Shown here in pieces: positions 29,305 through 44,552 of a stretch of 64,000 bases of DNA. Location of the stretch: the IMG/VR virus record IMGVR_UViG_3300005289_000016, positions 212,033 to 276,032 of that record. The stretch is one strand, 5' to 3'. The position numbers and the translations under genes are program-made. Below the pieces are notes generated by a model that searched no databases, was not told the origin of the DNA, and saw only the letters and a list, made by a program, of their open reading frames with translations. Numbering within the stretch: the first letter of the stretch is position 1; each line of letters begins with the position of its first letter.

Positions 29305-29318
29305 TGAACGTCCCTATG

Positions 29319-29876: not shown

Positions 29877-29878
29877 GG

Positions 29879-30876: not shown

Positions 30877-31918
30877 GTTCCTCTTTGGTCATCAGATCCC
30901 AGCGGTTCTTCATGTCGATGAGGCATTTTTCAGAACCCGTTTCTTCCATCAGGCGCTGAACGTCACACCGTGAACAACTATCGAGGAAACAGCAGTCGCC
31001 ACACTCAGGATGTGCACTGTATTTCTCAAGGTTACGGTAGTACGCTTCTTGCCGGTCTGCGATCACAGCTTCGGCAGTCCACGGCTTTGCCAGCTTGAAG
31101 TTGTCTTTGTAGATGGTGAGGTTCTCTACCAACACAATGGTCGAATAGAGGGAGCCGCCACGGTAGGTGAATTCATACCCTTCCTTGTTGCCTGGAATCA
31201 ATGGTACAAATTCAACGGTATTCACACGCTCTTTTGCAAAGTCAGCGAATACCTTCAGATCTCGCTTGAACCGCTCGGCATTCATGATGTTGTCGAAGCC
31301 TTGGCGGGCTGCCACAAAGGGGAACTCAATCACCTTGTGGATACCTTCGCCGAAGTCCATGTAGCGGATCTTCTTGAACGCCTCGTCGCTGAAGTGAGCA
31401 AGGTTACCTTCCTCGACGTTGATGGTGGCATACAGGCGACTGAACTCTGCTTTCTTCATCATGCCTTTGAATCGCGCAAGGCGATCCTTGAGGATGGCGA
31501 CGTATTTGTCGTTGCAGATATTCTTCAAGGTGATGGGTGTGCCAACGTTGACATACTTGCCGGGCATCAACTCATCCATCAACTCAGCGACTTCTTCCAG
31601 ATGGCGATCATGGAGCATCGCCATGTTGATCGTCAGCACTTTAAAGTGAGCAGCGATCTTGCGAAACGATGGGTGGCGCAATACCTGAAACCCGTTGTCC
31701 GCACTGGTAATGTCGGTCGGCCCTAACTTGAGTTCCAGCAGACGGAAGTCGTGGGCTTTCAAGTCTTCGAGCAACGCTTCCAAATCAGCCGTGTCTTCAT
31801 CAGACATGTCGAAGGGAGCGAAGTTCTTCTCGACAGTACAGCCGGGGCAGCTATAGCCACACCCCTTGAGGACTTCCAGACCCAAGTTAAAGGTCTGGGA
31901 TACACGTTCACTGAACAT
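30854..31918 (-). CDS. Divergent radical SAM-like protein with Cys-rich C-terminus
   Basis: CGYSCPGC (CxxxCxxC); GPTD in place of GGEP; C-terminal CGDCCFLDSCSRC...C. Confidence 0.75.
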   Translation of the reverse strand: MFSERVSQTFNLGLEVLKGCGYSCPGCTVEKNFAPFDMSDEDTADLEALLEDLKAHDFRLLELKLGPTDITSADNGFQVLRHPSFRKIAAHFKVLTINMAMLHDRHLEEVAELMDELMPGKYVNVGTPITLKNICNDKYVAILKDRLARFKGMMKKAEFSRLYATINVEEGNLAHFSDEAFKKIRYMDFGEGIHKVIEFPFVAARQGFDNIMNAERFKRDLKVFADFAKERVNTVEFVPLIPGNKEGYEFTYRGGSLYSTIVLVENLTIYKDNFKLAKPWTAEAVIADRQEAYYRNLEKYSAHPECGDCCFLDSCSRCDVQRLMEETGSEKCLIDMKNRWDLMTKEEHDAHSPL

Positions 31919-32936
31919 ACTGCAACCCCACTAGGCAGTCTTTGATTGACATGTGTTGCATGATCGCGCTGATGCCCTTCTCAGAGCAGCTACTGATGTA
32001 GGGGCACGTCATACAGGGCGTGTCCTTCAAGTACTCCAGAGACGCATCCAGAGCCTTCTGACGCACTGTCAAGAGGTTCTCCATGGTCCATGGCTTAGGG
32101 ATGGTGAACTCGTCGTCTAGGAACGGGCAATCATCCTTCAAGAAAGGCACCCAGTACAGCTTACCGTCGGTGTACAGCAAGTTGCACATGGTCCCAGTGT
32201 CATAATGCAGGTCTGGGTTACGTCGACGTTCATCCTGACCTTCAAGCTCAGAGTAGTACTGCGTGATGCGGTAACTCATGCGCTTGATCTGCTCACTCAC
32301 CATCAGGGTCTTTTGTTTAACCCGACCGTAAGGGATGTTCAGGATGTCATCTTTGTCCACAGGGAACTCAACGTCAAACCCAGCCCGCATGAACTCCTCG
32401 AACTTGTCGTCCACGGTGTCCTGCGTGCAACTGATAACAAAGCCAGCCTCATTCAAGTACGCCGATTGCATGGTGTTCTTGATGTGGGAAAGCTTCTTAC
32501 CCACCATGTTGCCGAACTTCTCATTGCGGAAGAAGTACGGCGCAGCAGGGATCAGGAAGCGGATAGGCTTACCTGGCACTGATTGATCGATCTCAGCACA
32601 CATACTCGTGTACTTGTCCATGTTCGTCTCAAGGAACGCTGCGTTGAACGTCACCTGATGGAACATCTGAGCCATCTCTTGGAACTCAGGATGGGCCATG
32701 ACCTCATCTTTGTTGCTGGCAGTCATGTAGTCGGTAGGGCCGACACCCAGATCGAACGCCACGTAACCTGCTGTGGTCATTTCCGTCAGCAGGTCCTTCA
32801 GGGCAGCGAGGTCATTGACATCACCGCCCATGGCCTTGTCGATCATGCATCCGGGACAGACGTGTCCGCACCCTCGGAATAGATCAAGCGTGATTTCCAG
32901 CCGCTGTCTGTGCTGGACGAAGTGTGGAGATTCCAT
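31908..32936 (-). CDS. Divergent radical SAM-like protein with Cys-rich C-terminus
   Basis: CGHVCPGC; GPTD; C-terminal CMTCPYISSC...C; paralog of 30854-31918. Confidence 0.75.
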   Translation of the reverse strand: MESPHFVQHRQRLEITLDLFRGCGHVCPGCMIDKAMGGDVNDLAALKDLLTEMTTAGYVAFDLGVGPTDYMTASNKDEVMAHPEFQEMAQMFHQVTFNAAFLETNMDKYTSMCAEIDQSVPGKPIRFLIPAAPYFFRNEKFGNMVGKKLSHIKNTMQSAYLNEAGFVISCTQDTVDDKFEEFMRAGFDVEFPVDKDDILNIPYGRVKQKTLMVSEQIKRMSYRITQYYSELEGQDERRRNPDLHYDTGTMCNLLYTDGKLYWVPFLKDDCPFLDDEFTIPKPWTMENLLTVRQKALDASLEYLKDTPCMTCPYISSCSEKGISAIMQHMSIKDCLVGLQYVQ

Positions 32937-33847
32937 TGGTCAAGTAACCCCTTGAAGCCGTTACAGGAGTGAGTCAGATCTTTCACCTCCCGAAGATGCT
33001 CAGAGAGGCAGTGACCCATGTAGTTACAGGAAGAGCAGTGACCATTGGTCGTGACTGCTTCTTTTTCTTTGGCACACCACGCAAGGTAACCAGCAACGCC
33101 ATCCACATCGAGGAAGAACTCGTTGTCATTGGCATCGAACTCAAGCACAGCCAGAGAGCCCGTCGGTGTGATGTAGAGGTGATCGTCACTGAAGGCATTA
33201 CGCGTACCTTCAGCCGCCTCTTTCACTTGCCGCTCATTCTCAAAGTAGAACTCTCGCTCAGGGTGTTCAATGACAGCCCAGACGAAACGCTCAAACTCAT
33301 CAAACGGCACGTTCTGGGCATTGGCCTGGTTCGTGCTGTAGGGTTTGATCTCGACGTCCTTTGCATTGGCCAGCATGTTCATGGTCTGCACGAACGTATC
33401 GACGCTCACGGTGTCCAGGAACTTGCGAGAGGCCAACGTCAGGATGGTGAAGGGACGCGTCAGCATGAAAAGGTTGTTCAACACCCGGTCATGCATCTCC
33501 CGTGCTTCAAAGTCATACGACACGCTGAGGTCGAAGTCCAAGTCCTCGGTGATCTCGTTGAGCAACGTGAGGTTCGAGACCAACACGATATCATCCAGAC
33601 CGTACCGGTGCAGGATCTCTTTCATCTCCAGCAGGTACTCGGGAGGCAACAGCAGGACTTCCCCACCGTAGATGTCGATGTGCCCAACGTCATAGTGCTC
33701 AAGGATCTCCAGCAGCCTTTCTTCAAAGACGCCCAAGTCCATGCGTGTCCGATCACCCAACTGCTCTGGTGTGAGATAACAGAACTCACAGCGCAGGTTA
33801 CAGTAGTAAGACGGGTTTACGCTGAGGTTGATTTTTGGCTTAGGCAT
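32843..33847 (-). CDS. Radical SAM/SPASM-domain protein
   Basis: CNLRCEFC, YGGEVL and C-terminal CSSCNYMGHC...C; overlaps the next gene by 94 nt. Confidence 0.85.
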   Translation of the reverse strand: MPKPKINLSVNPSYYCNLRCEFCYLTPEQLGDRTRMDLGVFEERLLEILEHYDVGHIDIYGGEVLLLPPEYLLEMKEILHRYGLDDIVLVSNLTLLNEITEDLDFDLSVSYDFEAREMHDRVLNNLFMLTRPFTILTLASRKFLDTVSVDTFVQTMNMLANAKDVEIKPYSTNQANAQNVPFDEFERFVWAVIEHPEREFYFENERQVKEAAEGTRNAFSDDHLYITPTGSLAVLEFDANDNEFFLDVDGVAGYLAWCAKEKEAVTTNGHCSSCNYMGHCLSEHLREVKDLTHSCNGFKGLLDQWNLHTSSSTDSGWKSRLIYSEGADTSVPDA

Positions 33848-34242: not shown

Positions 34243-35331
34243 TTAGCCTTTCGCGATGAGTTGGACAGATTCGTCCACGTAAGGTGTTGGGATCAGGTAT
34301 TCAGTCTGACCGTTCAATTCAATGATGCGAGGAGCCAGCGTCTTCATCTTCTTGCAATGATGTTCAGCCAGACCCAGTCGTTTAGTGTCAGCCACCGTCT
34401 TACGGCAACCGTTGCACACAGGGAACATCGGACACTCGTTACAGGCGTCCTTCATCGACCACAGTTCTTCCTGATTGCGCAGTGGAGTGAAGAACTCACC
34501 CGCCATCTCTTTCTCGAAGTCGATGGGGTACTTGAGGTCGTCACCAAAGGCTCCACAGGAGAAATACTGGTTGCCCGGTTGCAGACTGCGGATACCGCCA
34601 TCGCAATCACGGGACAGAGGGCAGATGGTGTTCTGCGTCGACAGGCGCTTGACCAATTGCTTGGTGTTGAACTCCCACTGCATGAGACCAGCGTCGTAGA
34701 TTTCAAGGTACTTCTCGTACATGTCAGCCTGAGTGTACATGGTCTCAGCGTTGCCCATGGAGACGCCCTTGTTGAGCACCACAGGACCAGAAGCTACCGC
34801 GTAGTTAACCTTGGCCTCTACGCCCATCCGCTGAGCCAGACGCACCGTGTCAAGGACCGTGTGCTCATTGCTCTTATCGACGACTGCAATGAAGTCAGGA
34901 CGATAGCCAATGCGCTCAAGGAACAGATCACTGACTGCCCAGAACTCTTCTTCAGTGAACGGCGTCTTATCGCCCTTGAGGCGTGCATCGCCGTACTGGA
35001 ACGAGGTCGTCACACCCAGACGTGGATGACGGAACAACTCTTCCCACATCTCAGGCTTCTTGTAGAAAGGCCAGAGGTTGCTGGTGAAGGAGATCGACGC
35101 ATCGGACTCCAGACGGTCTAGGATCGCGATCAGGTCCCAGTAATACTGCACAGGCATCATGAGAGGGTCACCGCCGTTAACGATGATGGTGCGCGTCTCA
35201 GGGTACCGTACGATGAACCGTTCCACATCCTCCAGACTCACGACCTCATTGGCGTCATCGGTCAGGTAGGTGCTGGAGCAAAAGGTGCACTTGAAGTTAC
35301 ACCGCTGCGTCGGCTTTAGGATCAGGTCCAT
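34243..35331 (-). CDS. Radical SAM/SPASM-domain protein
   Basis: LKPTQRCNFKCTFC, NGGDPLM; SPASM-like CPLSRDC...SCG...CNECPMFPVCNGC...C. Confidence 0.9.
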   Translation of the reverse strand: MDLILKPTQRCNFKCTFCSSTYLTDDANEVVSLEDVERFIVRYPETRTIIVNGGDPLMMPVQYYWDLIAILDRLESDASISFTSNLWPFYKKPEMWEELFRHPRLGVTTSFQYGDARLKGDKTPFTEEEFWAVSDLFLERIGYRPDFIAVVDKSNEHTVLDTVRLAQRMGVEAKVNYAVASGPVVLNKGVSMGNAETMYTQADMYEKYLEIYDAGLMQWEFNTKQLVKRLSTQNTICPLSRDCDGGIRSLQPGNQYFSCGAFGDDLKYPIDFEKEMAGEFFTPLRNQEELWSMKDACNECPMFPVCNGCRKTVADTKRLGLAEHHCKKMKTLAPRIIELNGQTEYLIPTPYVDESVQLIAKG

Positions 35332-35512
35332 CGGTGTTCCCCTTGTTCTCGTATTTGCCCGTCCAGACACCAAGGTAATCTCGACGGAATTGTTCGTGCT
35401 CTGGACTACGCGCTTCCTCTAACTTCTTACGAAGCCAGGTATCGTCACCCAGCTTACGAGGGAACCGAGGTACACGTGGTAGGCGACGCATTGGTAGGAT
35501 GGGGTCGGTCAT
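35297..35512 (-). CDS. Small basic hypothetical protein
   Basis: 71 aa MTDPILPMRR; SD GGAG; TATGAA 20 nt upstream. Confidence 0.5.
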   Translation of the reverse strand: MTDPILPMRRLPRVPRFPRKLGDDTWLRKKLEEARSPEHEQFRRDYLGVWTGKYENKGNTDGPDPKADAAV

Positions 35513-35531
35513 GGATAACACTCCAGATATA

Positions 35532-35537: not shown

Positions 35538-35568
35538 GGAATGTTTGAGTGAAGTTTTAAATAGCGGA

Positions 35569-35593
35569 CATAGGGGAGGGACGAGCCCTCCCC
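35569..35593 (-). terminator. Hairpin/terminator inside the rSAM cluster
   Basis: ggggaggg-acgag-ccctcccc immediately after the stop of 35598-36596. Confidence 0.6.
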
Positions 35594-35597
35594 GAGT

Positions 35598-36596
35598 CTA
35601 CAAGACGACTTTGAACATCTCTCGGATAGAGCAGACCTTGGACTTGCTGTCCAAGACCTTGTCGTGCAGGAAACAACGCAGCCCACACCGGGAGTAGTAC
35701 TCGCACTCAAAGCAACCGTAATGTTCCACGAATGCAACCTCAGCAGCGTCCTTGGCAATCAAGCCTTCAGTCTCGTCTAAGATCGCATCCTTACCTGCTT
35801 CAGACCAACAGGTACTGATCACGCCATCCTTGTTGATGATCTTGGTGGAGCGACACGTGGTCTCATTGATCACGTTGTTCTTCCAGTCCTTGATCGGATA
35901 CGAGTTCGGGTACTTGTTGTTCAGCGCAATGTACATCGTGCTGATCAGGTCTTCGTCAGGTTGGTGATGCAGGTACATCTGACTGGGGATGTAATGATCG
36001 AAGTACACATCGTACCGTTCACACATCTCAGCAAACTCCTCGCCTTCTTTACCGTCAAGGAATGTCTGGATGTTCTGTTTGGTGATCACCACGTTGACCG
36101 TCTGGACCAGATCACCCAGCGTCTCGAGGTTCTTGAAGAACAAGGCTCGTTGAGCAGGATTGAATCGACCAGCGGGGTCATAAGACGTGGCCAGCCAGAC
36201 ACGCTCATCAATCACCCGAAGGCGTTCGATAAGGTGCCTGACTCGGTCAGTGTTGTGATAAACGAGGTTCGTGCCAAAGACCAGTTTGATGTGCTTGAAG
36301 TGACTCAAGGCCATCTTGCCGGCTTGGTAGTAAGCTTCGAAGAGTTCGTCGCTCACCTCGTTCATGAACAGTTCACCGCCTGTGAAGTTAACCACCATGG
36401 CTGTGTCTGGATGTGTAGTCGCCAACAACTTAGCAACCTTGTCGATCACTAGATCCCCGTCGAGACCCACTTTGGAATCGTGGTCCTGGTGGCAGAATGA
36501 GCAGCGCATGTTGCACAGCTCGAACAGAATCAGGTGAGCTTCTTTCCACTTACCTTTCTTCTCACGCAGGATGTCTACAACAGGGATCAGGTTCAT
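35598..36596 (-). CDS. Radical SAM/SPASM-domain protein
   Basis: CNMRCSFC, TGGELF; C-terminal CRS...TC...CFECEYYSRCGLRC...C. Confidence 0.85.
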   Translation of the reverse strand: MNLIPVVDILREKKGKWKEAHLILFELCNMRCSFCHQDHDSKVGLDGDLVIDKVAKLLATTHPDTAMVVNFTGGELFMNEVSDELFEAYYQAGKMALSHFKHIKLVFGTNLVYHNTDRVRHLIERLRVIDERVWLATSYDPAGRFNPAQRALFFKNLETLGDLVQTVNVVITKQNIQTFLDGKEGEEFAEMCERYDVYFDHYIPSQMYLHHQPDEDLISTMYIALNNKYPNSYPIKDWKNNVINETTCRSTKIINKDGVISTCWSEAGKDAILDETEGLIAKDAAEVAFVEHYGCFECEYYSRCGLRCFLHDKVLDSKSKVCSIREMFKVVL

Positions 36597-37654
36597 TACC
36601 AGTTCGCTCCCTTGACGCAGTCCTTCAGGACGTCGACTTGTTCCGACAGGATGTACCGCACGAGGTTCTCGTCGTACTTGCCGGAGTCAGCGTTAGGCAG
36701 AGCCAGACGCTTGGCACCTTTGAACATGGTCAGCACCCGCTGCTTCAACACCTCAGGATCAAGGAGGTCTTCATCGGACGTGAGCAACTGATAGACCAGT
36801 CGAGTACGGCCCGCAGTCGGACCCTCGTCGCAATGATCCAACACGGTGATCAGTTCCAGAAGCAGGCCCTTGATCCACACGTCCGTTGGCTTGTTGTCGA
36901 ACAAGTTCGGCTGGAGGAACATGGTGCTGTTCAGGTAGTGGAAGTTCAACGTACCTTCGAACACGCTCTGCCCATTGAGCAGGGTGTTCATGTCAGCACC
37001 GGCGAAGTCCCAGGCTTCCGGGTTGGCGATCTGACGACCCCATACGTCGAGAGCATCGTAGCCGTTGGCCAGCGCGATGCGACGCAGGATGTTCTTCAGA
37101 GTCTTTGGCAGCTTGCCCACACGGTTGTCGGTGAACAGACGCATGATGCGCCATTCCAGCGACAGCGAGTCTGGGTTTTCAGTAACCAGCTCACCGAACA
37201 CTTCCTGATGAGGATCTTCGAACGCGAACAGTTCTTGAACGACCTGCTCGTTGATGGTCACTTCGTTCAGGATGTTGGTGGTCGGCTTGTGCATGTTCAG
37301 CAGCGACACCTGGAAGGTAGCCTTCTTGCAGAGCATGATCCAGCGGAACACGTCGATCGTGACGTTAGGCATTACTGCCTTGACCAACATGGTGTACAGG
37401 CGCAGGTAGGTCTGACCGTCGACGTAGACGAACACCTTGTCGTCTTGGCTGAAGATCTTGTCGAACAGGTCCTTGAACACATCGCCTTCAAGCGCGTCCA
37501 GAGACACCGCATAGCCAAGTTGCTCAGAACTCTCCTCGTACTCCGCCGGGTGATACTCAAAGCCCACACGTGGACTGATGGTGGCGTACGGAATACGCTT
37601 ACGTGAGATACGGGATTCGATCTCGACGTAGATTCGGTCACGCAGATGGTACAT
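36596..37654 (-). CDS. Hypothetical protein in radical SAM cluster
   Basis: 352 aa; SD AAGGAG before ATG 37654; strong codon bias. Confidence 0.75.
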   Translation of the reverse strand: MYHLRDRIYVEIESRISRKRIPYATISPRVGFEYHPAEYEESSEQLGYAVSLDALEGDVFKDLFDKIFSQDDKVFVYVDGQTYLRLYTMLVKAVMPNVTIDVFRWIMLCKKATFQVSLLNMHKPTTNILNEVTINEQVVQELFAFEDPHQEVFGELVTENPDSLSLEWRIMRLFTDNRVGKLPKTLKNILRRIALANGYDALDVWGRQIANPEAWDFAGADMNTLLNGQSVFEGTLNFHYLNSTMFLQPNLFDNKPTDVWIKGLLLELITVLDHCDEGPTAGRTRLVYQLLTSDEDLLDPEVLKQRVLTMFKGAKRLALPNADSGKYDENLVRYILSEQVDVLKDCVKGANW

Positions 37655-38480
37655 GTTCAATCTCCTTGACCGTCTTGTTCATCTGCTCAACAAGAGCATT
37701 GAACTGTTCAGGGACTTCCTGACCGATCAAGGCCATGAAGAAAGGGTTGTTCTGGTGAGCGAAGAACGCAAACAGGTTGGCCCCAGCGAAGCAGTATTCG
37801 TTGAAGAACAACTTGTTCCAGTTCCAATCGCTCTCTTCGATGCCCATGCAGACCAACGGGAAGTTGTCATGAGCAATCAACTTGACGAAGTTCAGACCTA
37901 CGAGGCCTTCTTCTTCATCTTGCGGGTAGTTCAGGACTTCTGACTTGAGGTCTTCTTTGCACTGGAAGGCATAAAGCGGCAACGAGTCCAGACGCCGGAG
38001 CCACAGGTCGACGAGGTCGTAGTTGGCTTCGATGAATGGCACTGGATCGAATGGCAGACTGAACGGTTTCCCGGTAGCCGCCAAGATCACGTTGATGGCC
38101 AACTCTTCCAGATCGCTGATGCTCACCAGTACAGTGGACTTGAGATAAGCCACCAGCAGGTTCTGCATGATCGTCTGGTCACCGAACTTCAACCGTACGG
38201 CGATGTTCAGGTTGGACAGGTACGTGATGAGCGCAGCGTCCTTCAGCCGACTGTTGTCAAGGCTGATGTGGAACTCTACGTTCTCGGTGAATTTGCGTTT
38301 TAAGTCGATGACCGGAATCGGTGCAATGGTCTGGATGACCACCAACCCATCGGGCTGTACGACTACTGTTGATGGCTCTTTGGGCAAGTCGTCAACAGAT
38401 GGTTCTTTGGACATGCGAGATCCTCCCCACATTGGGTTACTACGGCCGGCATTAGCGTGACAGTTAGAATGGCATGACAT
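37638..38480 (-). CDS. Hypothetical protein with two in-frame starts (38480 and 38414); long form begins MSCHSNCH
   Basis: AGGAG 6 nt before ATG 38480 and GGAGGA 6 nt before ATG 38414; same frame, no stop between. Confidence 0.75.
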   Translation of the reverse strand: MSCHSNCHANAGRSNPMWGGSRMSKEPSVDDLPKEPSTVVVQPDGLVVIQTIAPIPVIDLKRKFTENVEFHISLDNSRLKDAALITYLSNLNIAVRLKFGDQTIMQNLLVAYLKSTVLVSISDLEELAINVILAATGKPFSLPFDPVPFIEANYDLVDLWLRRLDSLPLYAFQCKEDLKSEVLNYPQDEEEGLVGLNFVKLIAHDNFPLVCMGIEESDWNWNKLFFNEYCFAGANLFAFFAHQNNPFFMALIGQEVPEQFNALVEQMNKTVKEIEHVPSA

Positions 38481-38570
38481 GACGAACTCCTAATGAACAT
38501 CAATACATACCAAACTAACTAGCAGTGTCTTTTAACGACGACCACGTGCGCAGTGACAGTTAGAATGGCA
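38457..38570. repeat. 18-bp exact direct repeat encoding CHSNCH
   Basis: gtgacagttagaatggca at 38457-38474 and 38553-38570. Confidence 0.95.
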
Positions 38571-39071
38571 ACTGGTGTGGCAGATGACGTTCGATACTGC
38601 CAACGGGCTGGCACGGCAGTAGGCGTTGTAGTAGTTCCACAACTCATCGCAGCTTGACTGGAAGTTACTCAAGTCCAGGATAGCGCCCTTATAAAGGGTC
38701 GACAGCGGCGCCGCCGAAGCAAAGTCACCAACACCGTACGCCGAGTTAGCCACCGCAGTACCGTCGTAGATCAGTTGGTTACCGAGCTGATAGTGCGACC
38801 GGTAGATCAGGATACGCATCAGACGGATGTTACCGAAGACGTTTGCGAAGTTACGCAACACAGCCTTGGCCTGCGCAGCGGCAGGAGCACCCGCTTGGAA
38901 GTTACCAGCCCCTACTGTTTCAGCACGGCCGTTGGTATCGCCGTAGAACCAGCCTGGAATAGATCCGGCTGGGTAGCTGTTGGTACCCCACGAGATACCA
39001 GAATTGCATCGAGCCCGGATACGCGCCATGGCTTCAACGCCCATGCGGTTCCGTGTAAGTACTTCGGCCAT
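38532..39071 (-). CDS. Putative virion/tail protein with C-terminal Cys/His repeat (candidate modification substrate)
   Basis: 179 aa rich in G/A/N/Y; ends ICHTSCHSNCHCARGRR. Confidence 0.7.
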   Translation of the reverse strand: MAEVLTRNRMGVEAMARIRARCNSGISWGTNSYPAGSIPGWFYGDTNGRAETVGAGNFQAGAPAAAQAKAVLRNFANVFGNIRLMRILIYRSHYQLGNQLIYDGTAVANSAYGVGDFASAAPLSTLYKGAILDLSNFQSSCDELWNYYNAYCRASPLAVSNVICHTSCHSNCHCARGRR

Positions 39072-39072
39072 A

Positions 39073-40107
39073 TCACACCTTTAGAATCAGGTTGGATTGT
39101 TGATTGCGACCCGAGAGGTAACGCAAGGTGTTCTTCAGTCCACCGCACCGCCCACTCTGCCATGGCAGACGGTGGCAGTCACCGCCGCACAGGTCAGACA
39201 CGTCGCACGCAAGGCATTCATCTGCCCAAGTCAACTCCTTGGCGATTTGCTCCACACGACCATCGGACTTGAGGAAGACTTCTACCCCCTCATCCATTTT
39301 GGCATGATGCAGTCGAGCAGCCGAATTCGGGCAGCCAGACAAAGAGCCGTCGGAGTTGATGGTCACCAGATTCTGCTCACAGTTGCGGCAGTTGGTGTCC
39401 ACCTTGACTACGTTGTTCTTCAGCTTCTCCTCGATGATGTCGAGGGTCTTGATCTTGTACGTTGGGTTGCGGGCCTTATACCGGTGGTACAGTGCGAGGT
39501 ACCAGTTGTCTTGCTCTTCGTTGTCCGGGAAGATCGACATGTTGACTTCAGCGTTACCGTCAACTGTCAGGCGCTCCAGAGACACGTCATCCACCGCGAA
39601 GCTGTCCAACTGGTCGAGCAGCCAGTCAGGGGTGGACTTGATCAACTCACGGCTCACAGAGACCTTCAGGGCAATGTGCACGCCATGACTGCGGAGCAAC
39701 TCAAGGTTGTTCTTCCACAGGTTGAATTGTTTCTCGTTACTCCATCGAATCCAGTGATCCCAGCTGGTGCCAATAACGCTACCGAAGTAGTCCTTGATGA
39801 AGTCGAGGTGAGCATCCGTGATCTTGAAAGTCAGGTTGCTGTTCGCACACATCGAGACATGCGGGTTGTCGAAGAAGTTATCGGCGTACCGCTTCAGCTT
39901 TTCCAGAGGTACGAGGAACGGCTCACCGCCATGGAACTCCATGTGGTAATGCGTACCCTCAGGGTACTTGGACATGAACTCTTTCACCCAGCCCGCAGTT
40001 GCATCGGGATCGAACTGGGTCTTGTCACCGTTCTTGCCATTGGTAAAGCAATGCTTGCAGTCCAGATTGCAGGAACCAGTGGTTTTGACATAAATGGTTT
40101 TGTTCAT
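39073..40107 (-). CDS. Radical SAM/SPASM-domain protein
   Basis: VKTTGSCNLDCKHC, FHGGEPF; SPASM-like CRNC...GCPN...CLACDVSDLCGGDC...C. Confidence 0.9.
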   Translation of the reverse strand: MNKTIYVKTTGSCNLDCKHCFTNGKNGDKTQFDPDATAGWVKEFMSKYPEGTHYHMEFHGGEPFLVPLEKLKRYADNFFDNPHVSMCANSNLTFKITDAHLDFIKDYFGSVIGTSWDHWIRWSNEKQFNLWKNNLELLRSHGVHIALKVSVSRELIKSTPDWLLDQLDSFAVDDVSLERLTVDGNAEVNMSIFPDNEEQDNWYLALYHRYKARNPTYKIKTLDIIEEKLKNNVVKVDTNCRNCEQNLVTINSDGSLSGCPNSAARLHHAKMDEGVEVFLKSDGRVEQIAKELTWADECLACDVSDLCGGDCHRLPWQSGRCGGLKNTLRYLSGRNQQSNLILKV

Positions 40108-40108
40108 G

Positions 40109-40621
40109 TTAAAGCTTCTTCTCTAGGAACTGCTCCAAGCCAAAACTCAGCATGATGGAGCTGTCAACGTTGATGGCCCGATGGTAGGTACCGCGAGGGA
40201 TGAATAGCGAATCCCCAGCCGACAGTTCTACCTGCCCATCTGGAGACTCAAAGACTTTGCGACCCTGGACCATGTAAATGATCACATCGTCGGGGTCGGT
40301 ATGCATGGTGAAGCTCTTCGAATCCTTGGGGGACAAGAAGAGATGACAGGACACAGGACCGTTGTGGTTAAAATGTCTGCCCAGTCGACGACATTCCTCG
40401 AACATGATGAAGTTCAACCGCTCAAAGCCTTCGACCTTGATGGGTTTGGTTTCACCATGCTCGAGGTAGTCGAGAGGACTCAAGGCCCCGTACGACTTGT
40501 CGTTCTCGATGTACTTGACCAACTGCTGCTCGTACGGATGAGGACTGTCGAAGAAACGGTCGAGTCCCAAGGATGCCTCGGTGATGCCGATAAACTCGTG
40601 ATCGTCCAATCTCTTCAACAT
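40109..40621 (-). CDS. JmjC/cupin_4-type 2OG-Fe(II) oxygenase
   Basis: FTMHTDPDDV (HxD), MVQGRKVF and LSAGDSLFIPRGTYH (distal H). Confidence 0.8.
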   Translation of the reverse strand: MLKRLDDHEFIGITEASLGLDRFFDSPHPYEQQLVKYIENDKSYGALSPLDYLEHGETKPIKVEGFERLNFIMFEECRRLGRHFNHNGPVSCHLFLSPKDSKSFTMHTDPDDVIIYMVQGRKVFESPDGQVELSAGDSLFIPRGTYHRAINVDSSIMLSFGLEQFLEKKL

Positions 40622-40645: not shown

Positions 40646-42091
40646 TTAGTCTTGCCACAGCGCAGGCCATACTTGACGCCACGCACCACCGCCCCAGATG
40701 TAGACCCCAGATCCGTTCCAGTGCACCGAGCAGTCAAAGCCTGCTGCGTTCTTCGGAGCGTAGCGGGCATCGTGGTCAGCCGAGTTCAAGTGATCGAACA
40801 TGGCGCCTGCCGTGAGCAGGTAACCATCGGAGTTGACGGTTCGGCCACGGGTGATGGCGTTAGGGATGTTACTCAGGCCCACTTGTGTTTTAGTCACGTT
40901 GTGCGGGTTGCTGTAGTTCTGGATGTGGCTGTTGAGCAAGGTGCCTGCGATAGCAGTGATCGCGTCCTTGGTTCGAGCCGGCGTCATGAAGCGGTCCGTC
41001 AAGATACCCGCTTCCGCCTCAGCTTTGGTGGCTGTCTGGAAGTTGTCTACCAGACTGAGTCCGACTTGAGCTTTGGTGGTGTTGTGCGGGTTGTTCTTGT
41101 CGTTGACGTGGTTCTGGATCAACGTACCGGCATGCACCATGATTGCTTGGTACACACGCAACGGCGTCATGAACACATCGTTGGCCGTCCCACCTTCCGC
41201 CTGTGCCTGTGTGGCAGTCAGGAAGTTGTCCACGTTACCAAGTCCGACTTGGGCTTTGGTCACGCTGTGTGGGTTGTTCTTCTTGGCTTCGTGAGCATCC
41301 ACGAGTTCCTGAGAGATCCGGTTGGCCAAGATCGACACGAGTGTCGGAGTCATGTAGCGGTTAGCCACCACACCTGCCAGGGCTTCAGCGTTCGACGCGA
41401 TCTGATAGTTCTCAACCAGACCCAAACCGACCTGAGCTTTCGTGGTCTTGTGTGGGTTGTTGAAATCGTTCAGGTGAGCATCGACCTTGTCGTCCACGGC
41501 ATCGATGTTCGCTTGCAGCTGGTCACGGATGATCTGCATCTGCTGACGCAATTCATCGTGAGACGCTTCATCACCTACCAAAATGGCGTTGGTGATCCGC
41601 TCCAGTTGCCACACGACGTATTCCCACCCGTAGGTATCGCCGATGTCGTGGATGTGCGGAGCAGGCGGATAAGCGGTAGGACGACCAATGATCGAACCCC
41701 ACTTGATCGGACGCTCATCGAGGTTAACCTGTTCGAGCAAGTCAGCCAGCGCTGCCAAGTTCCAGGAGTACTCGCCACCCACAACCTGATAGCTGATCTC
41801 GACCGTGATCGGAGCCTGCAACTTGATGACGACCGCACACTGCACGTCCTTACCGCTTCGCAAGGAAGCCTGAGAGAACGGCTGTGCCAGTACAAAGTCA
41901 TCAACCGGTACCAGCGGGAGGCCAGTGTCCACGTTGATGATGGTAAAGGAGCCGGTGTAGAACGGGCCTGCCTTGGGTACGAACACTCGTGCGGTATTCG
42001 TGGTGATTTCCCGTCGCTCACCGACAATCAAGTTCGTCGGTGACGTACCGTCTAGATCAAGAGGGTACTGGATAATCGGTGGTACACTCAT
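40646..42091 (-). CDS. Tail fibre protein with HxxxxxNPHxxTKxQVGL repeats
   Basis: 481 aa; 4 repeats; C-terminal YIWGGGAWRQVW; N-terminus homologous to 42162-44552. Confidence 0.8.
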   Translation of the reverse strand: MSVPPIIQYPLDLDGTSPTNLIVGERREITTNTARVFVPKAGPFYTGSFTIINVDTGLPLVPVDDFVLAQPFSQASLRSGKDVQCAVVIKLQAPITVEISYQVVGGEYSWNLAALADLLEQVNLDERPIKWGSIIGRPTAYPPAPHIHDIGDTYGWEYVVWQLERITNAILVGDEASHDELRQQMQIIRDQLQANIDAVDDKVDAHLNDFNNPHKTTKAQVGLGLVENYQIASNAEALAGVVANRYMTPTLVSILANRISQELVDAHEAKKNNPHSVTKAQVGLGNVDNFLTATQAQAEGGTANDVFMTPLRVYQAIMVHAGTLIQNHVNDKNNPHNTTKAQVGLSLVDNFQTATKAEAEAGILTDRFMTPARTKDAITAIAGTLLNSHIQNYSNPHNVTKTQVGLSNIPNAITRGRTVNSDGYLLTAGAMFDHLNSADHDARYAPKNAAGFDCSVHWNGSGVYIWGGGAWRQVWPALWQD

Positions 42092-42115
42092 GGAGGAACT
42101 CCATCATCCGAAAAG

Positions 42116-42121
42116 TTCATA
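42116..42121 (-). promoter_or_regulatory. Candidate late promoter core
   Basis: TATGAA 25 nt upstream of the tail-fibre start 42091, just after the hairpin 42125-42155. Confidence 0.45.
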
Positions 42122-42124
42122 AAC

Positions 42125-42155
42125 GACACACCACGTGGGTTAGACGTGGTGTGTC
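42125..42155 (-). terminator. Hairpin/terminator between tail-fibre genes
   Basis: gacacaccacgt-gggttag-acgtggtgtgtc. Confidence 0.65.
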
Positions 42156-42161
42156 TCAGGA

Positions 42162-44552
42162 TCAGGCGAACAACGGCATGGAGGCGTCGATGACTGTGAT
42201 CAGTTCGTCGCACATCTTGCCAATGGAGTCGTCCACCTTGGCCGTGGTAGAGGCCGGCGTCATGATCAGGTTGGTTGCAGTACCGGTAATCGCTTGAGCG
42301 TTGGTCGCCGCCGCGTAGTTCGGCACACTGCCCAACCCTACTTGCGCCTTGGTCACGGCCTGAGGGTTATCGCGACGAGCGTCGAATGCCTTCAGTGCAG
42401 CAATTTCAGTCGCAGGGTCGGTGACGACCGCCGGGTAGACGATGTTGGCCGGTTGAACCGTAATGAGGTCAGACACCTCATCCCACACTGGGAACGTCGC
42501 CGCTACAAATTTCTTGTAGGTCAGCTCCGTGATGCACAGGCGGTTACGGGTACCGGTTGCCTTCAGCCAGATTTCCATCTTAGCCGAGGTATCCGTCCCT
42601 ACCGACACGACACCGATCTCGATCGGCTTGTCGCCCTTGGACAATTGGGTTACCCGCATGCCTTTAGGAATCATCAAGAACGGACCAGCTCCGTCGATGT
42701 TGTCATACACCGCACCAATCTCAACCAAGAGCGTGTGGTGCTGGAACTCGCCCAGTGCTTCGTCATCACGACCGCCAGTGATCATCAACGTGACGTCAGC
42801 GGTTTGATCGGATGCCGAGTGAGACAGTTCACCCAACTTGACCCAATGAGTCGGAGGCAGAACCTCAGTCCCCGAGCCGTTGTCGAGCATCGGCATTGGA
42901 GGGACGTCTGTCTGGATCGACGCACCAGAGACCGCACTGTTAATGTCAGCCTTTACTTCAGGGTAGGTCTTGCCATCGAACTTATCGGTGTCAGCTGCCT
43001 TACCACTGAGGATGTCGGCTTTGGCTTGCGGGTAGTTCTTACCGTCGAACTTCAGCGCGTTACCGGCGTCGATGGTCGCGATCCAAGCCTGCAATTGAGC
43101 CTGGGTCAGGTTGTAGACACGGCTGGAGTTAGCCGCAGTGCCATTGACATCCAAGCGCCCGTTGATCAGATCATCGATCTCTTGTTCGGTGTACGTGCCC
43201 ACCTGCGCCGCAGTAACATGGTGCGGGTTGGTGTAGTCCGTGACGTGCGCGTTGGAGCTGTCACCCACCAGTTCGTTGATCGCGTACCGGACAGCCAGAG
43301 GCGTCATGTAACGATCGTTGGCCGTAGCCGCACGAGACTCAGCTTCAGTAGCCACCGCGTAGTTCTGGACAGAGCCCAGTCCGACTTGGGACTTAGTCAC
43401 GCTGTGTGGGTTGTTGAAGTCCTGAACGTGGTCCTGAACTCCCGAACCGACAGTCTGGCTCAATACGTAAGCCAGCAGACGAGGTGTGATCACACCCGAG
43501 TCGTCCACACCAGACAAGGCTGCCGGGTTGGTCGCGATGCCGATGTTCACCACGTTACCCAGACCGACTTGGGCCTTGGTTGTTTGGTGAGGGTTGTTCT
43601 TGTCCGCGATGTGGTTATCGAGTTCGACCCCGACAATCGCTTCGATCGCTTCACGAGTCCGCAGGGGAGTCATGTAACGGGCGTTGGACGAACCAGCCTC
43701 TGCTTCAGCCTGAGTGGCCAATGCAAAGTTCTGCACACTGCCAAGGCCGACTTGAGCCTTAGTGGTCTGGTGCGGGTTGTTCATGTCCGCCAAGTGCAGA
43801 TTAAGCGCTGCGGTGGACACGGCGTCAATCAACTGCTTAGTACGCAGAGGCGTCATAAAGCGGTTGTTAGCCACACCAGCCTGAGCTTCACCAACGGTAG
43901 CCGTCGGGAAGTTATCGACCAGTCCCAGCCCTACCTGAGCCTTGTTGACTTCGTGTGGGTTAGCTTTGTTGGCGATGTGGTCTGCCAAGCCCCCGGCGTT
44001 CTTTTGAAGGATCGCCTTTTCGATGTCATCCAGCTCGTCGACCACTTCCGACATGCCGACGAAGTCGTCAATGTTGAAGTCGTGGTTGACCACCGGGAAT
44101 TCACGAGGCAGTTCGACCACCTGTTCCCAGTTCGCAATGCGCGGGTTGAACGCCACGTTAAGCAGAAGCTCGTTGAACTTCTGATCGTCCAATACCCAAT
44201 CGTCACCGATGGTCTGGTACTCCATGCGGAGTTGACCTTCAAGGTTACGATCGTAGAACGTAATGGCGCCGTAGACCGGCAAACCAATGGTATGAGACGC
44301 GTAAGCGAAGTGATAGCCGAAGTTGAAGTGCTCGCCCTCATTGAGGGGAGTACCCAAGGCTGGGTTGTTGACGTTGGCACCCTGCGGATACAGTCGCAGT
44401 TTCACGCTGTCAGCATAAAACGGACCGCTACGCGGAATGATGTAATAGTGATCGAACGTACCTCTCGAACGAATCGATTGGGTTTCGGTCACCTTGTTTG
44501 TTGCCGCGACACCCGTCGGATCGAAAGGGTATTGTGGAAGGACAGTACTCAT
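42162..44552 (-). CDS. Tail fibre protein with NPHxxTKxQVGL repeats
   Basis: 796 aa; 6 repeats plus short A-N/D-x-x-K-F-D-G-K fibre repeats. Confidence 0.8.
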   Translation of the reverse strand: MSTVLPQYPFDPTGVAATNKVTETQSIRSRGTFDHYYIIPRSGPFYADSVKLRLYPQGANVNNPALGTPLNEGEHFNFGYHFAYASHTIGLPVYGAITFYDRNLEGQLRMEYQTIGDDWVLDDQKFNELLLNVAFNPRIANWEQVVELPREFPVVNHDFNIDDFVGMSEVVDELDDIEKAILQKNAGGLADHIANKANPHEVNKAQVGLGLVDNFPTATVGEAQAGVANNRFMTPLRTKQLIDAVSTAALNLHLADMNNPHQTTKAQVGLGSVQNFALATQAEAEAGSSNARYMTPLRTREAIEAIVGVELDNHIADKNNPHQTTKAQVGLGNVVNIGIATNPAALSGVDDSGVITPRLLAYVLSQTVGSGVQDHVQDFNNPHSVTKSQVGLGSVQNYAVATEAESRAATANDRYMTPLAVRYAINELVGDSSNAHVTDYTNPHHVTAAQVGTYTEQEIDDLINGRLDVNGTAANSSRVYNLTQAQLQAWIATIDAGNALKFDGKNYPQAKADILSGKAADTDKFDGKTYPEVKADINSAVSGASIQTDVPPMPMLDNGSGTEVLPPTHWVKLGELSHSASDQTADVTLMITGGRDDEALGEFQHHTLLVEIGAVYDNIDGAGPFLMIPKGMRVTQLSKGDKPIEIGVVSVGTDTSAKMEIWLKATGTRNRLCITELTYKKFVAATFPVWDEVSDLITVQPANIVYPAVVTDPATEIAALKAFDARRDNPQAVTKAQVGLGSVPNYAAATNAQAITGTATNLIMTPASTTAKVDDSIGKMCDELITVIDASMPLFA

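What the first reader, a model, noticed from the sequence alone, without database searches (positions are those of the whole stretch)
38532..39071. Candidate substrate: 179-aa protein with C-terminal (CHxx)n repeat CHTSCHSNCHCARGRR
Seen: four Cys and three His in 11 residues at the extreme C-terminus (38532-38582), with Cys every fourth residue, followed by a basic tail. The gene lies directly downstream of the first rSAM gene. Known: CXXX-repeat and His-Xaa-Ser repeat peptides are described targets of rSAM-SPASM systems, and the H-T-S triad fits a three-residue cyclophane-type site. Inference: this is a core peptide fused to a folded G/N/Y-rich carrier, possibly a fibre-tip protein. Alternatively it is a trimeric metal-binding site.
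Basis: partly seen in the sequence, partly recalled or inferred. Interest (0 to 1): 0.82.

Follow-up and report, generated by a model that had tools for sequence, protein, structure and literature searches.

The report
Phage fibre-module protein with invariant Cys-His tail
A small protein of a giant soil phage ends in an almost perfectly conserved Cys-His-x-Ser repeat. Hundreds of related phages carry the same tail, always next to tail-fibre genes and several radical-SAM enzymes, so it is probably the enzymes' target on a virion protein, a kind of viral protein modification not yet described.

Summary
ORF 38532-39071 (minus strand, 179 aa) ends in ICHTSCHSNCHCARGRR-stop. This is not a chance motif.

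- **Family size:** a profile search found 505 cluster representatives.
- **Tail conservation:** 234 of 261 unique family sequences end exactly C-H-x-S-C-H-x-[S/N]-C-H-x-[S/A/N]-R-G-R-R-COOH, while the body falls to about 20% identity.
- **Structure:** AlphaFold gives a confident folded domain with no PDB relative and a flexible tail.
- **Distribution:** the family is essentially restricted to phages and has no Pfam or NCBIfam model and no literature.
- **Gene context:** it sits in a conserved module after tail-fibre genes, with usually three SPASM-type radical-SAM enzymes, a cupin or 2OG oxygenase, and two unknown proteins (p280, p354). 78 of 79 loci have a radical-SAM-like gene within 6 kb.
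- **Variants:** some fuse the domain to a glycine-rich fibre-type domain. Others replace RGRR with an endosialidase-type intramolecular chaperone, and those loci lack the second radical-SAM gene.

Best reading (about 0.5): a trimeric fibre-associated protein whose tail is the protein-borne substrate of these maturases. The chemistry is unresolved. The main rival is an unmodified metal-binding clasp. No modification has been shown.

The parts
38532..39071 (-). CH179: a 179-aa protein made of a folded alpha/beta domain (residues 1-163) and a flexible C-terminal tail. It is the member in this window of a large, phage-restricted, unannotated family.
   Evidence: ORF and sequence. 36 close and 505 profile-level relatives. 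AF2 pLDDT 88.8, with the tail at 73 falling to 47. No PDB fold match. No Pfam or NCBIfam hit.
38535..38582 (-). Invariant tail: three C-H-x-S/N units plus R-G-R-R-COOH (here CHTS CHSN CHCA RGRR).
   Evidence: In two of three alignments the only invariant columns besides M1 lie in the tail; in the 36 closest relatives nine body columns are also invariant. 234 of 261 unique sequences keep the exact register. Close relatives differ here only by synonymous changes.
39073..40107 (-). rSAM1: a radical-SAM enzyme with a full SPASM domain, directly upstream and translationally coupled to CH179.
   Evidence: Pfam Radical_SAM. Alignment A4 shows CxxxCxHC, GGEP, C-x10-G-x4-C and CxxCx5CxxxC...C all invariant. 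Best PDB profile hits are TigE 8VPO, anSME 4K36-39, CteB 5WGG, ChlB and YydG.
40109..40621 (-). Cupin / JmjC-like Fe(II) oxygenase.
   Evidence: Pfam Cupin_2 and JmjC_2. The H107-x-D109...H147 triad is conserved in 46 orthologues. It is syntenic in most jumbo-type loci.
37638..38480 (-). p280: the universal partner protein (phrog_20767), fold unknown. In this subclade its disordered N-terminus carries a second CHSNCH copy.
   Evidence: PHROG hit. Present in 75 of 79 loci. AF2 pLDDT 90.8 with no PDB match. No conserved Cys or His.
38457..38474 (-). Exact 18-nt repeat of 38553-38570. It encodes C-H-S-N-C-H at residues 3-8 of p280.
   Evidence: Conserved with synonymous changes in L007, L009 and L010.
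36596..37660 (-). p354: a conserved partner of unknown function.
   Evidence: Syntenic in jumbo-type loci. No family hit. Only D81 and E169 are conserved.
35598..36596 (-). rSAM2: a SPASM-type radical-SAM paralogue. It is present with RGRR-type tails and absent from the chaperone-type loci.
   Evidence: Conserved C28/C32/C35 plus seven C-terminal Cys. Co-variation.
34243..35373 (-). rSAM3: a SPASM-type radical-SAM paralogue.
   Evidence: Pfam Radical_SAM at 1.1e-11. Conserved Cys pattern. Syntenic.
30854..33847 (-). Three further radical-SAM-like ORFs: 32843-33847, 31908-32936 and 30854-31918.
   Evidence: Pfam hit for the first. CxxxCxxC near the N-terminus and Cys-rich C-termini in all three. 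The DT01 orthologues are annotated as radical SAM.
28753..30442 (-). Three tandem 2OG-Fe(II) oxygenase genes (PF13759).
40646..44552 (-). Two tail-fibre-like structural genes (481 aa and 796 aa) directly upstream of the module.
   Evidence: PHROG virion structural / tail / tail fibre families for the 481-aa protein. Repeated NPH..TKAQVGLG motifs are visible in both translations.

Best explanation
CH179 is a small accessory protein of the phage tail-fibre module. It has a folded domain that probably sits in a trimer at or near the distal end of a fibre. From this domain hangs a flexible, invariant tail of three Cys-His-x-Ser/Asn units ending in Arg-Gly-Arg-Arg-COOH.

The tail is most likely the protein-borne substrate of the co-encoded SPASM-type radical-SAM enzymes, of which there are three conserved paralogues and six in this phage. 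The inferred steps are:
1. Each enzyme generates a 5'-deoxyadenosyl radical.
2. The radical abstracts a hydrogen from a side-chain or alpha carbon in a CHxS unit.
3. A covalent cross-link forms. Candidates are His (or Tyr) ring to Ser/Asn C-beta, as in three-residue cyclophanes, or Cys sulfur to a carbon, as in sacti- and ranthipeptides.
4. The reaction is repeated unit by unit.
5. The JmjC-like cupin and the 2OG oxygenases possibly add hydroxylations.

The RGRR-COOH end would act as a recognition handle. The product would be a rigid, protease-resistant clasp on a virion protein that may also bind metal.

Shown here: the motif, its conservation, the fold and flexible tail, the operon, the SPASM features and the fibre context. 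Inferred: that the tail is modified, which enzyme acts on it, the chemistry, trimer formation and virion location.
For: 1. The tail is extremely and specifically conserved while the body diverges to 20-25% identity. In the broad alignments the invariant columns (apart from M1) are C164, H165, S167, C168, H169, C172, H173, R176, R178 and R179; the closest 36 relatives share further body columns. 234 of 261 unique sequences keep the exact register, including the non-ligand positions: S 221/234, S/N 228/234, S/A/N 234/234, and G 198/234 in RGRR.
2. The tail is unstructured in a confident model.
3. The gene is translationally coupled to rSAM1. 78 of 79 loci have a radical-SAM-like ORF within 6 kb, 67 have one adjacent, and the mode is three per locus. 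This holds across two different gene orders and deep divergence.
4. rSAM1, rSAM2 and rSAM3 all keep complete SPASM cysteine sets. The nearest characterised relatives of rSAM1 are all peptide or protein maturases. Among them, TigE acts on a repeating motif, and the others include anSME, CteB, YhhB, AmcB, PapB, FxsB and DynA.
5. Natural variants keep H-x-S/N units without the Cys. They replace the third His by Tyr, and they amplify the unit to 13 copies with an unchanged enzyme set. This is the behaviour of an iteratively processed repeat.
6. rSAM2 is present in all RGRR-type loci that have enough flank. It is absent from the loci where RGRR is replaced by an intramolecular chaperone.
7. The fibre context is consistent. 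The gene follows fibre genes with gaps of 0-5 nt in the small-type loci. There are fusions to Gly_rich_2 and to Peptidase_S74.
8. The HXS system is a precedent: radical-SAM enzymes mature a folded protein at an S-H-R-S-S unit of His-x-Ser repeats (PMC13128918).
Against: - No mass-spectrometric, proteomic or expression data exist for any member. No RNA run holds the locus.
- All radical-SAM hits are far below curated family cutoffs, so the chemistry cannot be assigned.
- Synteny is partly inherited, so the locus counts are not independent.
- The rSAM2/RGRR co-variation rests on two related lineages, possibly a single event.
- Cys and His are classic metal ligands.
- The chaperone-bearing variants place the repeats exactly where trimeric fibres fold, which an unmodified metal site would also explain.
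- RSL2 ORF068 is annotated only as hypothetical, whereas the neighbouring ORF065 is annotated as a virion structural protein.
Confidence: 0.5

Rival explanations
1. The tail is an unmodified metal-binding clasp. Three chains bring nine Cys and nine His together along a three-fold axis and bind Zn, Fe or an Fe-S cluster, stabilising the end of a trimeric fibre protein. The radical-SAM enzymes would then act on something else, such as the fibres, p280, p354 or a small molecule.
For: - Cys and His are the only residues invariant across all tail variants.
- In P0155 and P0173 the repeats lie immediately before a Peptidase_S74 intramolecular chaperone, which folds trimeric fibre ends.
- The 4-residue spacing would put Cys and His on one face of a helix (inference).
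- From my own knowledge, not tested here: T4 gp37 (His-x-His iron sites), T4 gp12 (zinc), P2/phi92 spike tips (iron) and lambda gpL (4Fe-4S) show that metal sites are common in phage fibres and tips.
Against: - A metal site does not explain the near-invariance of Ser/Asn at the fourth position, of Gly in RGRR, or of the exact C-terminal placement.
- It does not explain the His-to-Tyr variants or the Cys-less H-S-N variants.
- It leaves three to six SPASM maturases in the operon without a candidate substrate. p280 and p354 have almost no invariant residues.
Confidence: 0.25
2. The modification is anSME-like. A tail Cys (or Ser) is oxidised to formylglycine or another carbonyl or dehydro residue rather than cross-linked, giving a reactive group on the fibre.
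For: - The best NCBIfam hit of rSAM1 is the anaerobic sulfatase maturase, aligned over nearly its full length, and anSME structures are the second-best PDB profile hit.
- The last unit, C-H-x-[S/A/N]-R, has the same Cys-to-Arg spacing as the sulfatase C-x-P/A-x-R motif.
- anSME acts on whole proteins without a leader (own knowledge).
Against: - The score is 51 bits against a cutoff of 349.
- Position 3 is never Pro and is Ala in only 9 of 234 sequences.
- There is no sulfatase domain.
- It does not explain three repeated units or the invariant His.
Confidence: 0.08
3. CH179 is a metallochaperone or Fe-S donor that supplies clusters to the six phage radical-SAM enzymes. It would be neither a substrate nor a structural protein.
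For: - C-terminal Cys/His-rich flexible tails are typical of metallochaperones (own knowledge).
- The phage encodes many Fe-S enzymes.
- Marine phage genomes with many radical-SAM genes also carry Fe-S assembly genes (PMC5332604).
Against: - Chaperone tails are usually variable in length and sequence, whereas this one is invariant in register.
- Fusions to a fibre-type glycine-rich domain and to an intramolecular chaperone point to a structural protein, as do tandem copies directly after giant fibre genes.
- No similarity to IscU, NfuA or A-type carriers was found.
Confidence: 0.07
4. The protein is a phage-side mimic or counter-measure related to the bacterial HXS defence, whose effector HxsA carries radical-SAM-matured basic His-x-Ser repeats that block DNA entry.
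For: There is a motif-level resemblance between [S/C]-H-x-S-[S/C] units followed by basic residues and the modified S-H-R-S-S unit of HxsA. Both depend on paired radical-SAM enzymes.
Against: - No NCBIfam hit to HxsA. The HxsB and HxsC scores are 27 and 24 bits against cutoffs of 370 and 268.
- There is no peptidoglycan-binding domain.
- The fibre-module context and fusions point to a structural role.
Confidence: 0.03

Closest known systems
HXS antiphage system (HxsA with His-x-Ser repeats matured by radical-SAM enzymes HxsB/HxsC plus HxsD; PMC13128918)
   Same: - A folded protein, not a short peptide, carries tandem His-x-Ser units next to basic residues.
- Two or more radical-SAM enzymes are encoded alongside.
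- A site-specific modification maps to an S-H-R-S-S unit, which is close to the C-H-x-S-C unit here.
   Different: - HXS is bacterial and defensive; this module is phage-encoded and sits in a fibre module.
- There is no HxsA, HxsB, HxsC or HxsD family membership.
- Here the repeats sit at the extreme C-terminus with Cys in every unit.
- The enzymes here are SPASM-type.
- No signal peptide or peptidoglycan-binding domain was detected.
Triceptides / three-residue cyclophane-forming radical-SAM systems (Xye, Grr, Fxs, and His-containing motifs such as HtkB's His-C2 to Lys-C-beta link, PMC11499958)
   Same: - The repeated aromatic-x-small/polar triad (H-x-S/N, with occasional Y-x-A/S) is present.
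- As in FXSXX-COOH, the motif is at the C-terminus.
- The maturases are SPASM radical-SAM enzymes.
- Repeats are processed iteratively.
   Different: - The substrate is a 160-aa folded domain, not a leader-core peptide.
- Every unit carries an invariant Cys.
- There are three to six maturase paralogues.
- All family scores are far below cutoffs (FxsB 40/370, YhhB 50/445, AmcB 44/425, GrrM 21/310).
- No cross-link has been shown.
RS-SPASM enzymes acting on short tandem repeats (TigE/TvgB cyclopropyl synthases on TIGSVS/TVGG; PapB on C-x3-D; CXXX-repeat systems)
   Same: - TigE (8VPO) is the best solved-structure profile hit of rSAM1.
- The substrates are tandem 4-6-residue repeats.
- Cys recurs every fourth residue, as in CXXX and C-x3-D repeats.
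   Different: - The match covers the radical-SAM core only (E 8e-12).
- The motifs share no residues.
- There is no Pfam hit to the CXXX-repeat target family; the only link is an Atlas lead at 0.41.
Anaerobic sulfatase-maturating enzyme and its C/S-x-P/A-x-R target
   Same: - It is the best NCBIfam hit of rSAM1 and the second-best PDB profile hit.
- It acts on a whole protein without a leader.
- The last unit, C-H-x-S/A-R, has the same Cys-to-Arg spacing.
   Different: - The score is 51 bits against a cutoff of 349.
- There is no Pro at position 3.
- There is no sulfatase domain.
- The target here is three repeated units with invariant His.
Metal-binding sites of phage fibres and spikes (T4 gp37 His-x-His iron sites, gp12 zinc, P2/phi92 spike iron, lambda gpL Fe-S; recalled, not tested)
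   Same: A short repeated ligand motif sits at the distal or C-terminal end of a probably trimeric fibre-module protein.
   Different: - Those sites are embedded in folded beta-structure.
- They are not accompanied by radical-SAM genes.
- They do not show conserved Ser/Asn and RGRR-COOH positions.

Membership tests
SPASM-domain radical-SAM maturases (the enzymes next to the finding) | CxxxCxxC radical-SAM cluster motif and a SAM-binding GGE motif | tested here: met
   C13/C17/C20 and HGGEPF are invariant in 23 rSAM1 orthologues. The same motifs are conserved in rSAM2 and rSAM3. Pfam Radical_SAM hits.
SPASM-domain radical-SAM maturases (the enzymes next to the finding) | Seven-Cys SPASM motif: C-x9-15-G-x4-C ... 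C-x2-C-x5-C-x3-C ... C | tested here: met
   C243-x10-G254-x4-C259, C298-x2-C301-x5-C307-x3-C311 and C321 are all invariant. The TIGR04085 HMM scores 25.7, just under its cutoff of 27.
HXS system (HxsABCD) | Effector belongs to the HxsA His-x-Ser repeat family | tested here: not met
   H-x-S units are present, but CH179 has no NCBIfam hit at E<=0.1 and no peptidoglycan-binding domain.
HXS system (HxsABCD) | Maturases are HxsB and HxsC equivalogs | tested here: not met
   HxsB scores 26.6 bits against a cutoff of 370. HxsC scores 23.5 bits against 267.9.
HXS system (HxsABCD) | HxsD partner protein | tested here: not met
   p280 and p354 have no NCBIfam hit.
Triceptides (three-residue cyclophane RiPPs) | Aromatic-x-x3 motif in the core | tested here: met
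   H-x-S, H-x-S/N and H-x-S/A/N units are present. There are rare Tyr substitutions and Cys-less H-S-N units. This is a sequence-level match only.
Triceptides (three-residue cyclophane RiPPs) | Maturase is a member of a curated cyclophane-forming family (FxsB, GrrM/OscB, YhhB, AmcB) | tested here: not met
   Scores are 40.2/370, 20.7/310, 50.5/445 and 43.8/425 bits against the cutoffs.
Triceptides (three-residue cyclophane RiPPs) | Short ribosomal precursor with a leader and a core | tested here: not met
   Residues 1-163 form a confidently folded domain, pLDDT 88.8.
Triceptides (three-residue cyclophane RiPPs) | C-C bond between the aromatic ring and C-beta of the third residue | not testable with these tools
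   This needs MS/MS and NMR on co-expressed or native protein.
Anaerobic sulfatase maturase / sulfatase pair | Enzyme passes TIGR03942 | tested here: not met
   51.4 bits against a cutoff of 349.45.
Anaerobic sulfatase maturase / sulfatase pair | Target motif C/S-x-P/A-x-R inside a sulfatase domain | tested here: not met
   The last unit is C-H-[G/S/C/T/N]-[S/A/N]-R, never with Pro and with Ala at position 3 in 9 of 234 sequences. No sulfatase Pfam domain was found.
CXXX-repeat radical-SAM target peptides | Cys every fourth residue in tandem repeats, and membership of the curated target family | tested here: inconclusive
   The spacing is met. There is no Pfam or NCBIfam hit. The Atlas feature search lists PF27846 only at score 0.41, which is a lead and not a match.
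Phage tail-fibre / fibre-tip accessory proteins | Encoded within the fibre module and structurally linked to fibre domains | tested here: met
   The module is downstream of PHROG tail / virion structural proteins. The gap to giant fibre-like genes in small-type loci is 0-5 nt. There are fusions to Gly_rich_2 and Peptidase_S74.
Phage tail-fibre / fibre-tip accessory proteins | Presence in the virion | not testable with these tools
   No proteomic data were found. RSL2 ORF068 and DT01 gp065 are annotated as hypothetical.

The most novel reading that the evidence does not exclude
Many large phages covalently mature a tail-fibre-associated virion protein with their own set of radical-SAM/SPASM enzymes, installing repeated cross-links in an invariant (Cys-His-x-Ser)n tail. 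The phages concerned include jumbo phages of Pseudomonas, Ralstonia and Burkholderia, as well as uncultured aquatic and soil phages.

This would be the first radical-SAM post-translational modification of a viral structural protein. It would also explain the unexplained multi-radical-SAM gene clusters of jumbo phages.
Probability: 0.4. Interest if true: 0.85.

Novelty: new variant of a known kind. Interest (0 to 1): 0.72.

Why it matters
Jumbo phage papers list clusters of three to six radical-SAM genes and guess at DNA repair or host metabolism (PMC8541153). Marine viral genomes carry up to twelve such genes (PMC5332604). This finding offers a concrete, testable substrate for them: a conserved 16-residue tail on a fibre-module protein.

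If the tail is modified, three things follow:
- RiPP-like radical chemistry extends to virus structural proteins.
- A new repeat motif and several uncharacterised SPASM enzyme clades become available for enzymology.
- Cultivable models already exist: DT01 on Pseudomonas aeruginosa, and RSL2, FLC and S13 on Ralstonia and Burkholderia.

If the tail instead binds metal unmodified, it is still a new, very widespread fibre motif. The parallel with the HXS defence effector raises the question of whether host and phage use related chemistry at the cell envelope.

Tried and rejected
- **Pfam, NCBIfam and PHROGs on CH179:** nothing beyond a weak unknown-function PHROG.
- **Foldseek of the CH179 and p280 models against PDB:** no match. 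BFVD returned only uncharacterised phage proteins.
- **ESM Atlas for CH179, p280 and p354:** scores of 0.4-0.7, which are leads only.
- **phmmer of rSAM1 against PDB:** nothing. The profile search was needed.
- **tblastn of the small-type proteins against isolate phages:** no match.
- **Literature search by motif strings:** returned German-language noise. Searches on phage radical-SAM/RiPP, Atu_ph07 and DT01 gave no functional information.
- **Sequencing-run search:** only DNA metagenomes from soil, compost and wetland, with no RNA.
- **Read-through joining CH179 to p280:** the two genes are in the same frame, but this was rejected because two to three in-frame stops separate them in all relatives.
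- **Looking for tail-less homologues to test tail/enzyme co-variation:** the apparent tail-less members (P0155, P0173) turned out to carry the repeats internally, so only the RGRR/rSAM2 co-variation could be scored.
- **Multimer modelling:** not available with these tools.
Full report
**What is there.** The window is part of a jumbo phage genome. It is identical to IMG/VR contig UViG_3300005289_000016 (276 kb). Its relatives are Pseudomonas phage pPa_SNUABM_DT01 and, more distantly, the Ralstonia/Burkholderia RSL2-FLC-S13 group. Similar DNA occurs in soil, compost and wetland metagenomes.

ORF 38532-39071 on the minus strand encodes 179 aa ending ICHTSCHSNCHCARGRR-stop. Its ATG lies one base after the stop of a radical-SAM gene at 39073-40107. 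A six-frame scan finds CH..CH elsewhere in the window at two places. One is the start of the next gene; the other is a non-coding frame.

**The motif is the most conserved part of a large family.**
- The word-indexed search gave 36 relatives at 32-88% identity.
- A profile search of 1.8 billion cluster representatives gave 505 hits at E<=1e-3 and 176 at E<=1e-10.
- In alignments that include DT01 and RSL2 or 105 diverse members, the invariant columns are the initiator Met (in the first alignment only) plus C164, H165, C168, H169, C172, H173, R176, R178 and R179. S167 is invariant or nearly so. Mean column identity in the broad alignment is only 21%. Among the 36 closest relatives some body columns are invariant too.
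- Anchored at the C-terminus, 248 of 261 unique sequences end in RR.
- 234 have the exact register [V/I]-C-H-x-S-C-H-x-[S/N]-C-H-x-[S/A/N]-R-G-R-R.
- Close relatives differ in this stretch only by synonymous changes.

**Structure.** With the 36-sequence alignment, AlphaFold2 gives a confident alpha/beta domain (mean pLDDT 88.8, pTM 0.82). Confidence falls from residue 165 onward, from 73 to 47. Foldseek finds nothing in the PDB; the best E-value is 0.4. In BFVD it finds only uncharacterised phage proteins, some of them much longer. There is no Pfam or NCBIfam model and only a weak unknown-function PHROG. The picture is a new folded domain carrying a flexible 16-residue tail.

**Context.** In the window the order on the minus strand is as follows.

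| Genes | Coordinates | Evidence |
|---|---|---|
| Two tail-fibre-like genes | 42162-44552, 40646-42091 | PHROG tail / virion structural hits for the 481-aa protein; shared fibre-type repeat motif in both |
| JmjC-like cupin | 40109-40621 | |
| rSAM1 | 39073-40107 | |
| CH179 | 38532-39071 | |
| p280 | 37638-38480 | |
| p354 | 36596-37660 | |
| rSAM2 | 35598-36596 | |
| rSAM3 | 34243-35373 | |
| Three more radical-SAM-like ORFs | 30854-33847 | |
| Three 2OG-Fe(II) oxygenases | 28753-30442 | |

A scan of IMG/VR returned 80 loci. I called ORFs in all of them and labelled the ORFs with phmmer and iterated HMMs.

- The jumbo-type order (fibre, fibre, cupin, rSAM1, CH, p280, p354, rSAM2, rSAM3) is kept down to about 25% identity of the CH protein.
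- A second, small type exists. It has CH proteins of 120-144 aa, usually as a tandem pair.
- In the small type these genes start 0-5 nt after giant fibre-like genes of up to 1842 aa, some with collagen-like repeats and one with a weak intramolecular-chaperone hit.
- In the small type the CH genes are followed by three divergent radical-SAM-like ORFs, a roughly 365-aa protein and p280.

Overall, 78 of 79 CH-bearing loci have a radical-SAM-like ORF within 6 kb, and the single exception is a truncated locus. 67 loci have one adjacent and 75 have p280. In the 63 loci with enough flank the number of radical-SAM-like ORFs is 2-5, with a mode of 3.

A scan of one genome per 185,579 prokaryotic species found only four loci, three of them metagenome-derived assemblies. 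The family is therefore essentially phage-restricted.

**The enzymes.**
- rSAM1 orthologues keep CxxxCxHC, GGEP and the complete SPASM cysteine pattern. rSAM2 and rSAM3 do so as well.
- rSAM1 has no N-terminal extension that could be an RRE domain. Its cluster motif starts at residue 13.
- The NCBIfam hits of rSAM1 are all peptide or protein maturases: anSME 51 bits, YhhB 50, AmcB 44, PapB 43, FxsB 40 and DynA 37. All are far below the cutoffs.
- A profile of rSAM1 finds TigE (8VPO, a cyclopropyl synthase acting on TIGSVS repeats; PMC10878394), then anSME, CteB, ChlB and YydG in the PDB.
- The cupin keeps an H-x-D...H triad and partially matches JmjC_2. That Pfam family includes ribosomal His and Arg hydroxylases (my own knowledge). 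A role on the invariant His or Arg residues is only an inference.
- p280 gives a confident model with no PDB match and has no conserved Cys or His. p354 has only two conserved acidic residues.

**Informative variants.**
- Some members keep H-S-N units without the Cys, or have Tyr in place of the third His.
- P0038 and L031 amplify the unit to 13 copies while the enzyme set is unchanged.
- P0152 and P0181 fuse the domain to a Pfam Gly_rich_2 domain.
- P0155 and P0173 have four CHxS units followed by GD(S/G)PG and a Peptidase_S74 endosialidase-type intramolecular chaperone. Such chaperones fold the C-terminal ends of trimeric fibres and are then cleaved off (own knowledge).
- A sister group ends ...CHGDGPGGGGGV, which is what that cleavage would roughly leave.
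- In the chaperone-type loci rSAM1, p280, p354 and rSAM3 remain, but rSAM2 is absent within 10 kb. It is present in all RGRR-type loci with enough flank. This co-variation is suggestive, but it rests on two related lineages.

**Interpretation.** Three facts need one explanation.
1. A flexible tail is invariant at ligand and non-ligand positions alike.
2. It is obligately associated with several SPASM maturases.
3. It sits in a fibre-module context that is probably trimeric.

I think the best account is a fibre-associated protein whose tail is the protein-borne substrate of the maturases, processed unit by unit, with RGRR-COOH as a handle. I put this at about 0.5.

The chemistry cannot be decided from sequence. 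The H-x-S/N triad and the His-to-Tyr substitution fit three-residue cyclophanes; His-containing examples are known, such as HtkB (PMC11499958). The Cys spacing fits thioether formation. The last unit loosely resembles the sulfatase motif.

The nearest functional precedent is the bacterial HXS defence. There, two radical-SAM enzymes mature a folded protein at an S-H-R-S-S unit of basic His-x-Ser repeats (PMC13128918). Membership of that system is excluded by the family scores.

The main rival, at about 0.25, is an unmodified metal clasp at a trimer axis. The chaperone-bearing variants and the known metal sites of phage fibres make this plausible. It does not account for the conserved Ser/Asn, Gly and terminal positions, and it leaves the maturases without a target. 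The two readings are not exclusive: a cross-linked tail could also bind metal.

**Side observation.** The first eight codons of p280 (M-S-C-H-S-N-C-H) contain an exact 18-nt copy of the tail-coding sequence, with a good Shine-Dalgarno site upstream.
- The copy is kept with synonymous changes in the closest relatives. Remnants (M-T-C-H) occur in further relatives. It is absent in DT01 and more distant members.
- It lies on the disordered N-terminus of p280.
- A downstream ATG with its own Shine-Dalgarno-like site exists, so the true start is uncertain.
- This may be a duplicated second substrate site or a relic.

**Limits.** No experiment or proteome bears on any member. DT01 and RSL2 annotate the gene as hypothetical, and the papers on these phages only list the radical-SAM genes. 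Multimer modelling was not available. Locus counts are not phylogenetically independent.

**Verdict.** The feature is a previously undescribed, widespread phage family and a new variant of radical-SAM substrate-enzyme modules, and it can be tested in cultivable phages.

Noticed in passing
window 38457-38474 (-) versus 38553-38570 (-): An exact 18-nt direct repeat places C-H-S-N-C-H at residues 3-8 of the next gene (p280), after a good Shine-Dalgarno site. It is conserved with synonymous changes in L007, L009 and L010, and remnants (M-T-C-H) occur in L014, L016, L027 and L030. It is absent in DT01, L004 and L005. The region is disordered in the p280 model. An alternative downstream start exists.
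   Followed up: partly
window 28753-40621 (-): About 12 kb holds six radical-SAM-like ORFs, three tandem 2OG-Fe(II) oxygenases (PF13759) and one cupin. The two most distal radical-SAM-like ORFs have CxxxCPGC motifs, like those of the small-type loci.
   Followed up: partly
L096-L099 and L050 (proteins P0155, P0173): Family members in which RGRR is replaced by a GD(S/G)PG linker and a Peptidase_S74 intramolecular chaperone domain. They have four CHxS units, and their loci lack the rSAM2 paralogue but keep rSAM1 and rSAM3.
   Followed up: yes
L031:5992-6675 and protein P0038: The tail is amplified to about 13 CHxS units in blocks ending SNV(P/V), with the usual enzyme set next to it.
   Followed up: partly
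L057-L090 (for example L070:1111-1874, L084:5267-6084): A second architecture: tandem pairs of 120-144-aa CH proteins start 0-5 nt after giant fibre-like genes (up to 1842 aa, some collagen-like). Three divergent radical-SAM-like ORFs and p280 follow. There is no counterpart among isolate phages.
   Followed up: partly
proteins P0152, P0181: The CH domain and tail are fused to an N-terminal Pfam Gly_rich_2 glycine-rich domain (453 aa and 436 aa).
   Followed up: partly
L004 (GCA_024105335.1, contig JAHLJO010000090, 241 kb): A contig filed under Streptomyces sp. CHB9.2 carries the whole fibre/radical-SAM/CH module and is probably a jumbo phage genome inside a bacterial assembly.
   Followed up: no
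window 26597-27337 (+): An ATP-grasp protein of the R2K clade (Pfam R2K_2 at 9e-29) lies on the opposite strand, just beyond the oxygenase genes and a putative peptidoglycan-binding protein at 27391-28116.
   Followed up: no
window 46301-47104 (-) and 47164-49647 (+): A spike-like protein with a weak DUF2345 (VgrG C-terminal) hit and an 827-aa protein with a weak SMC_N hit. In the close relative L007 a PAAR protein lies nearby. This places the module next to baseplate and spike genes.
   Followed up: no
proteins P0150, P0154, P0157, P0165, P0170: A subgroup ends ...Y-C-H-S-S-C-H-x-S-C-H-G-S-[I/L] with no RGRR. Their contigs are too short to show the neighbourhood.
   Followed up: partly
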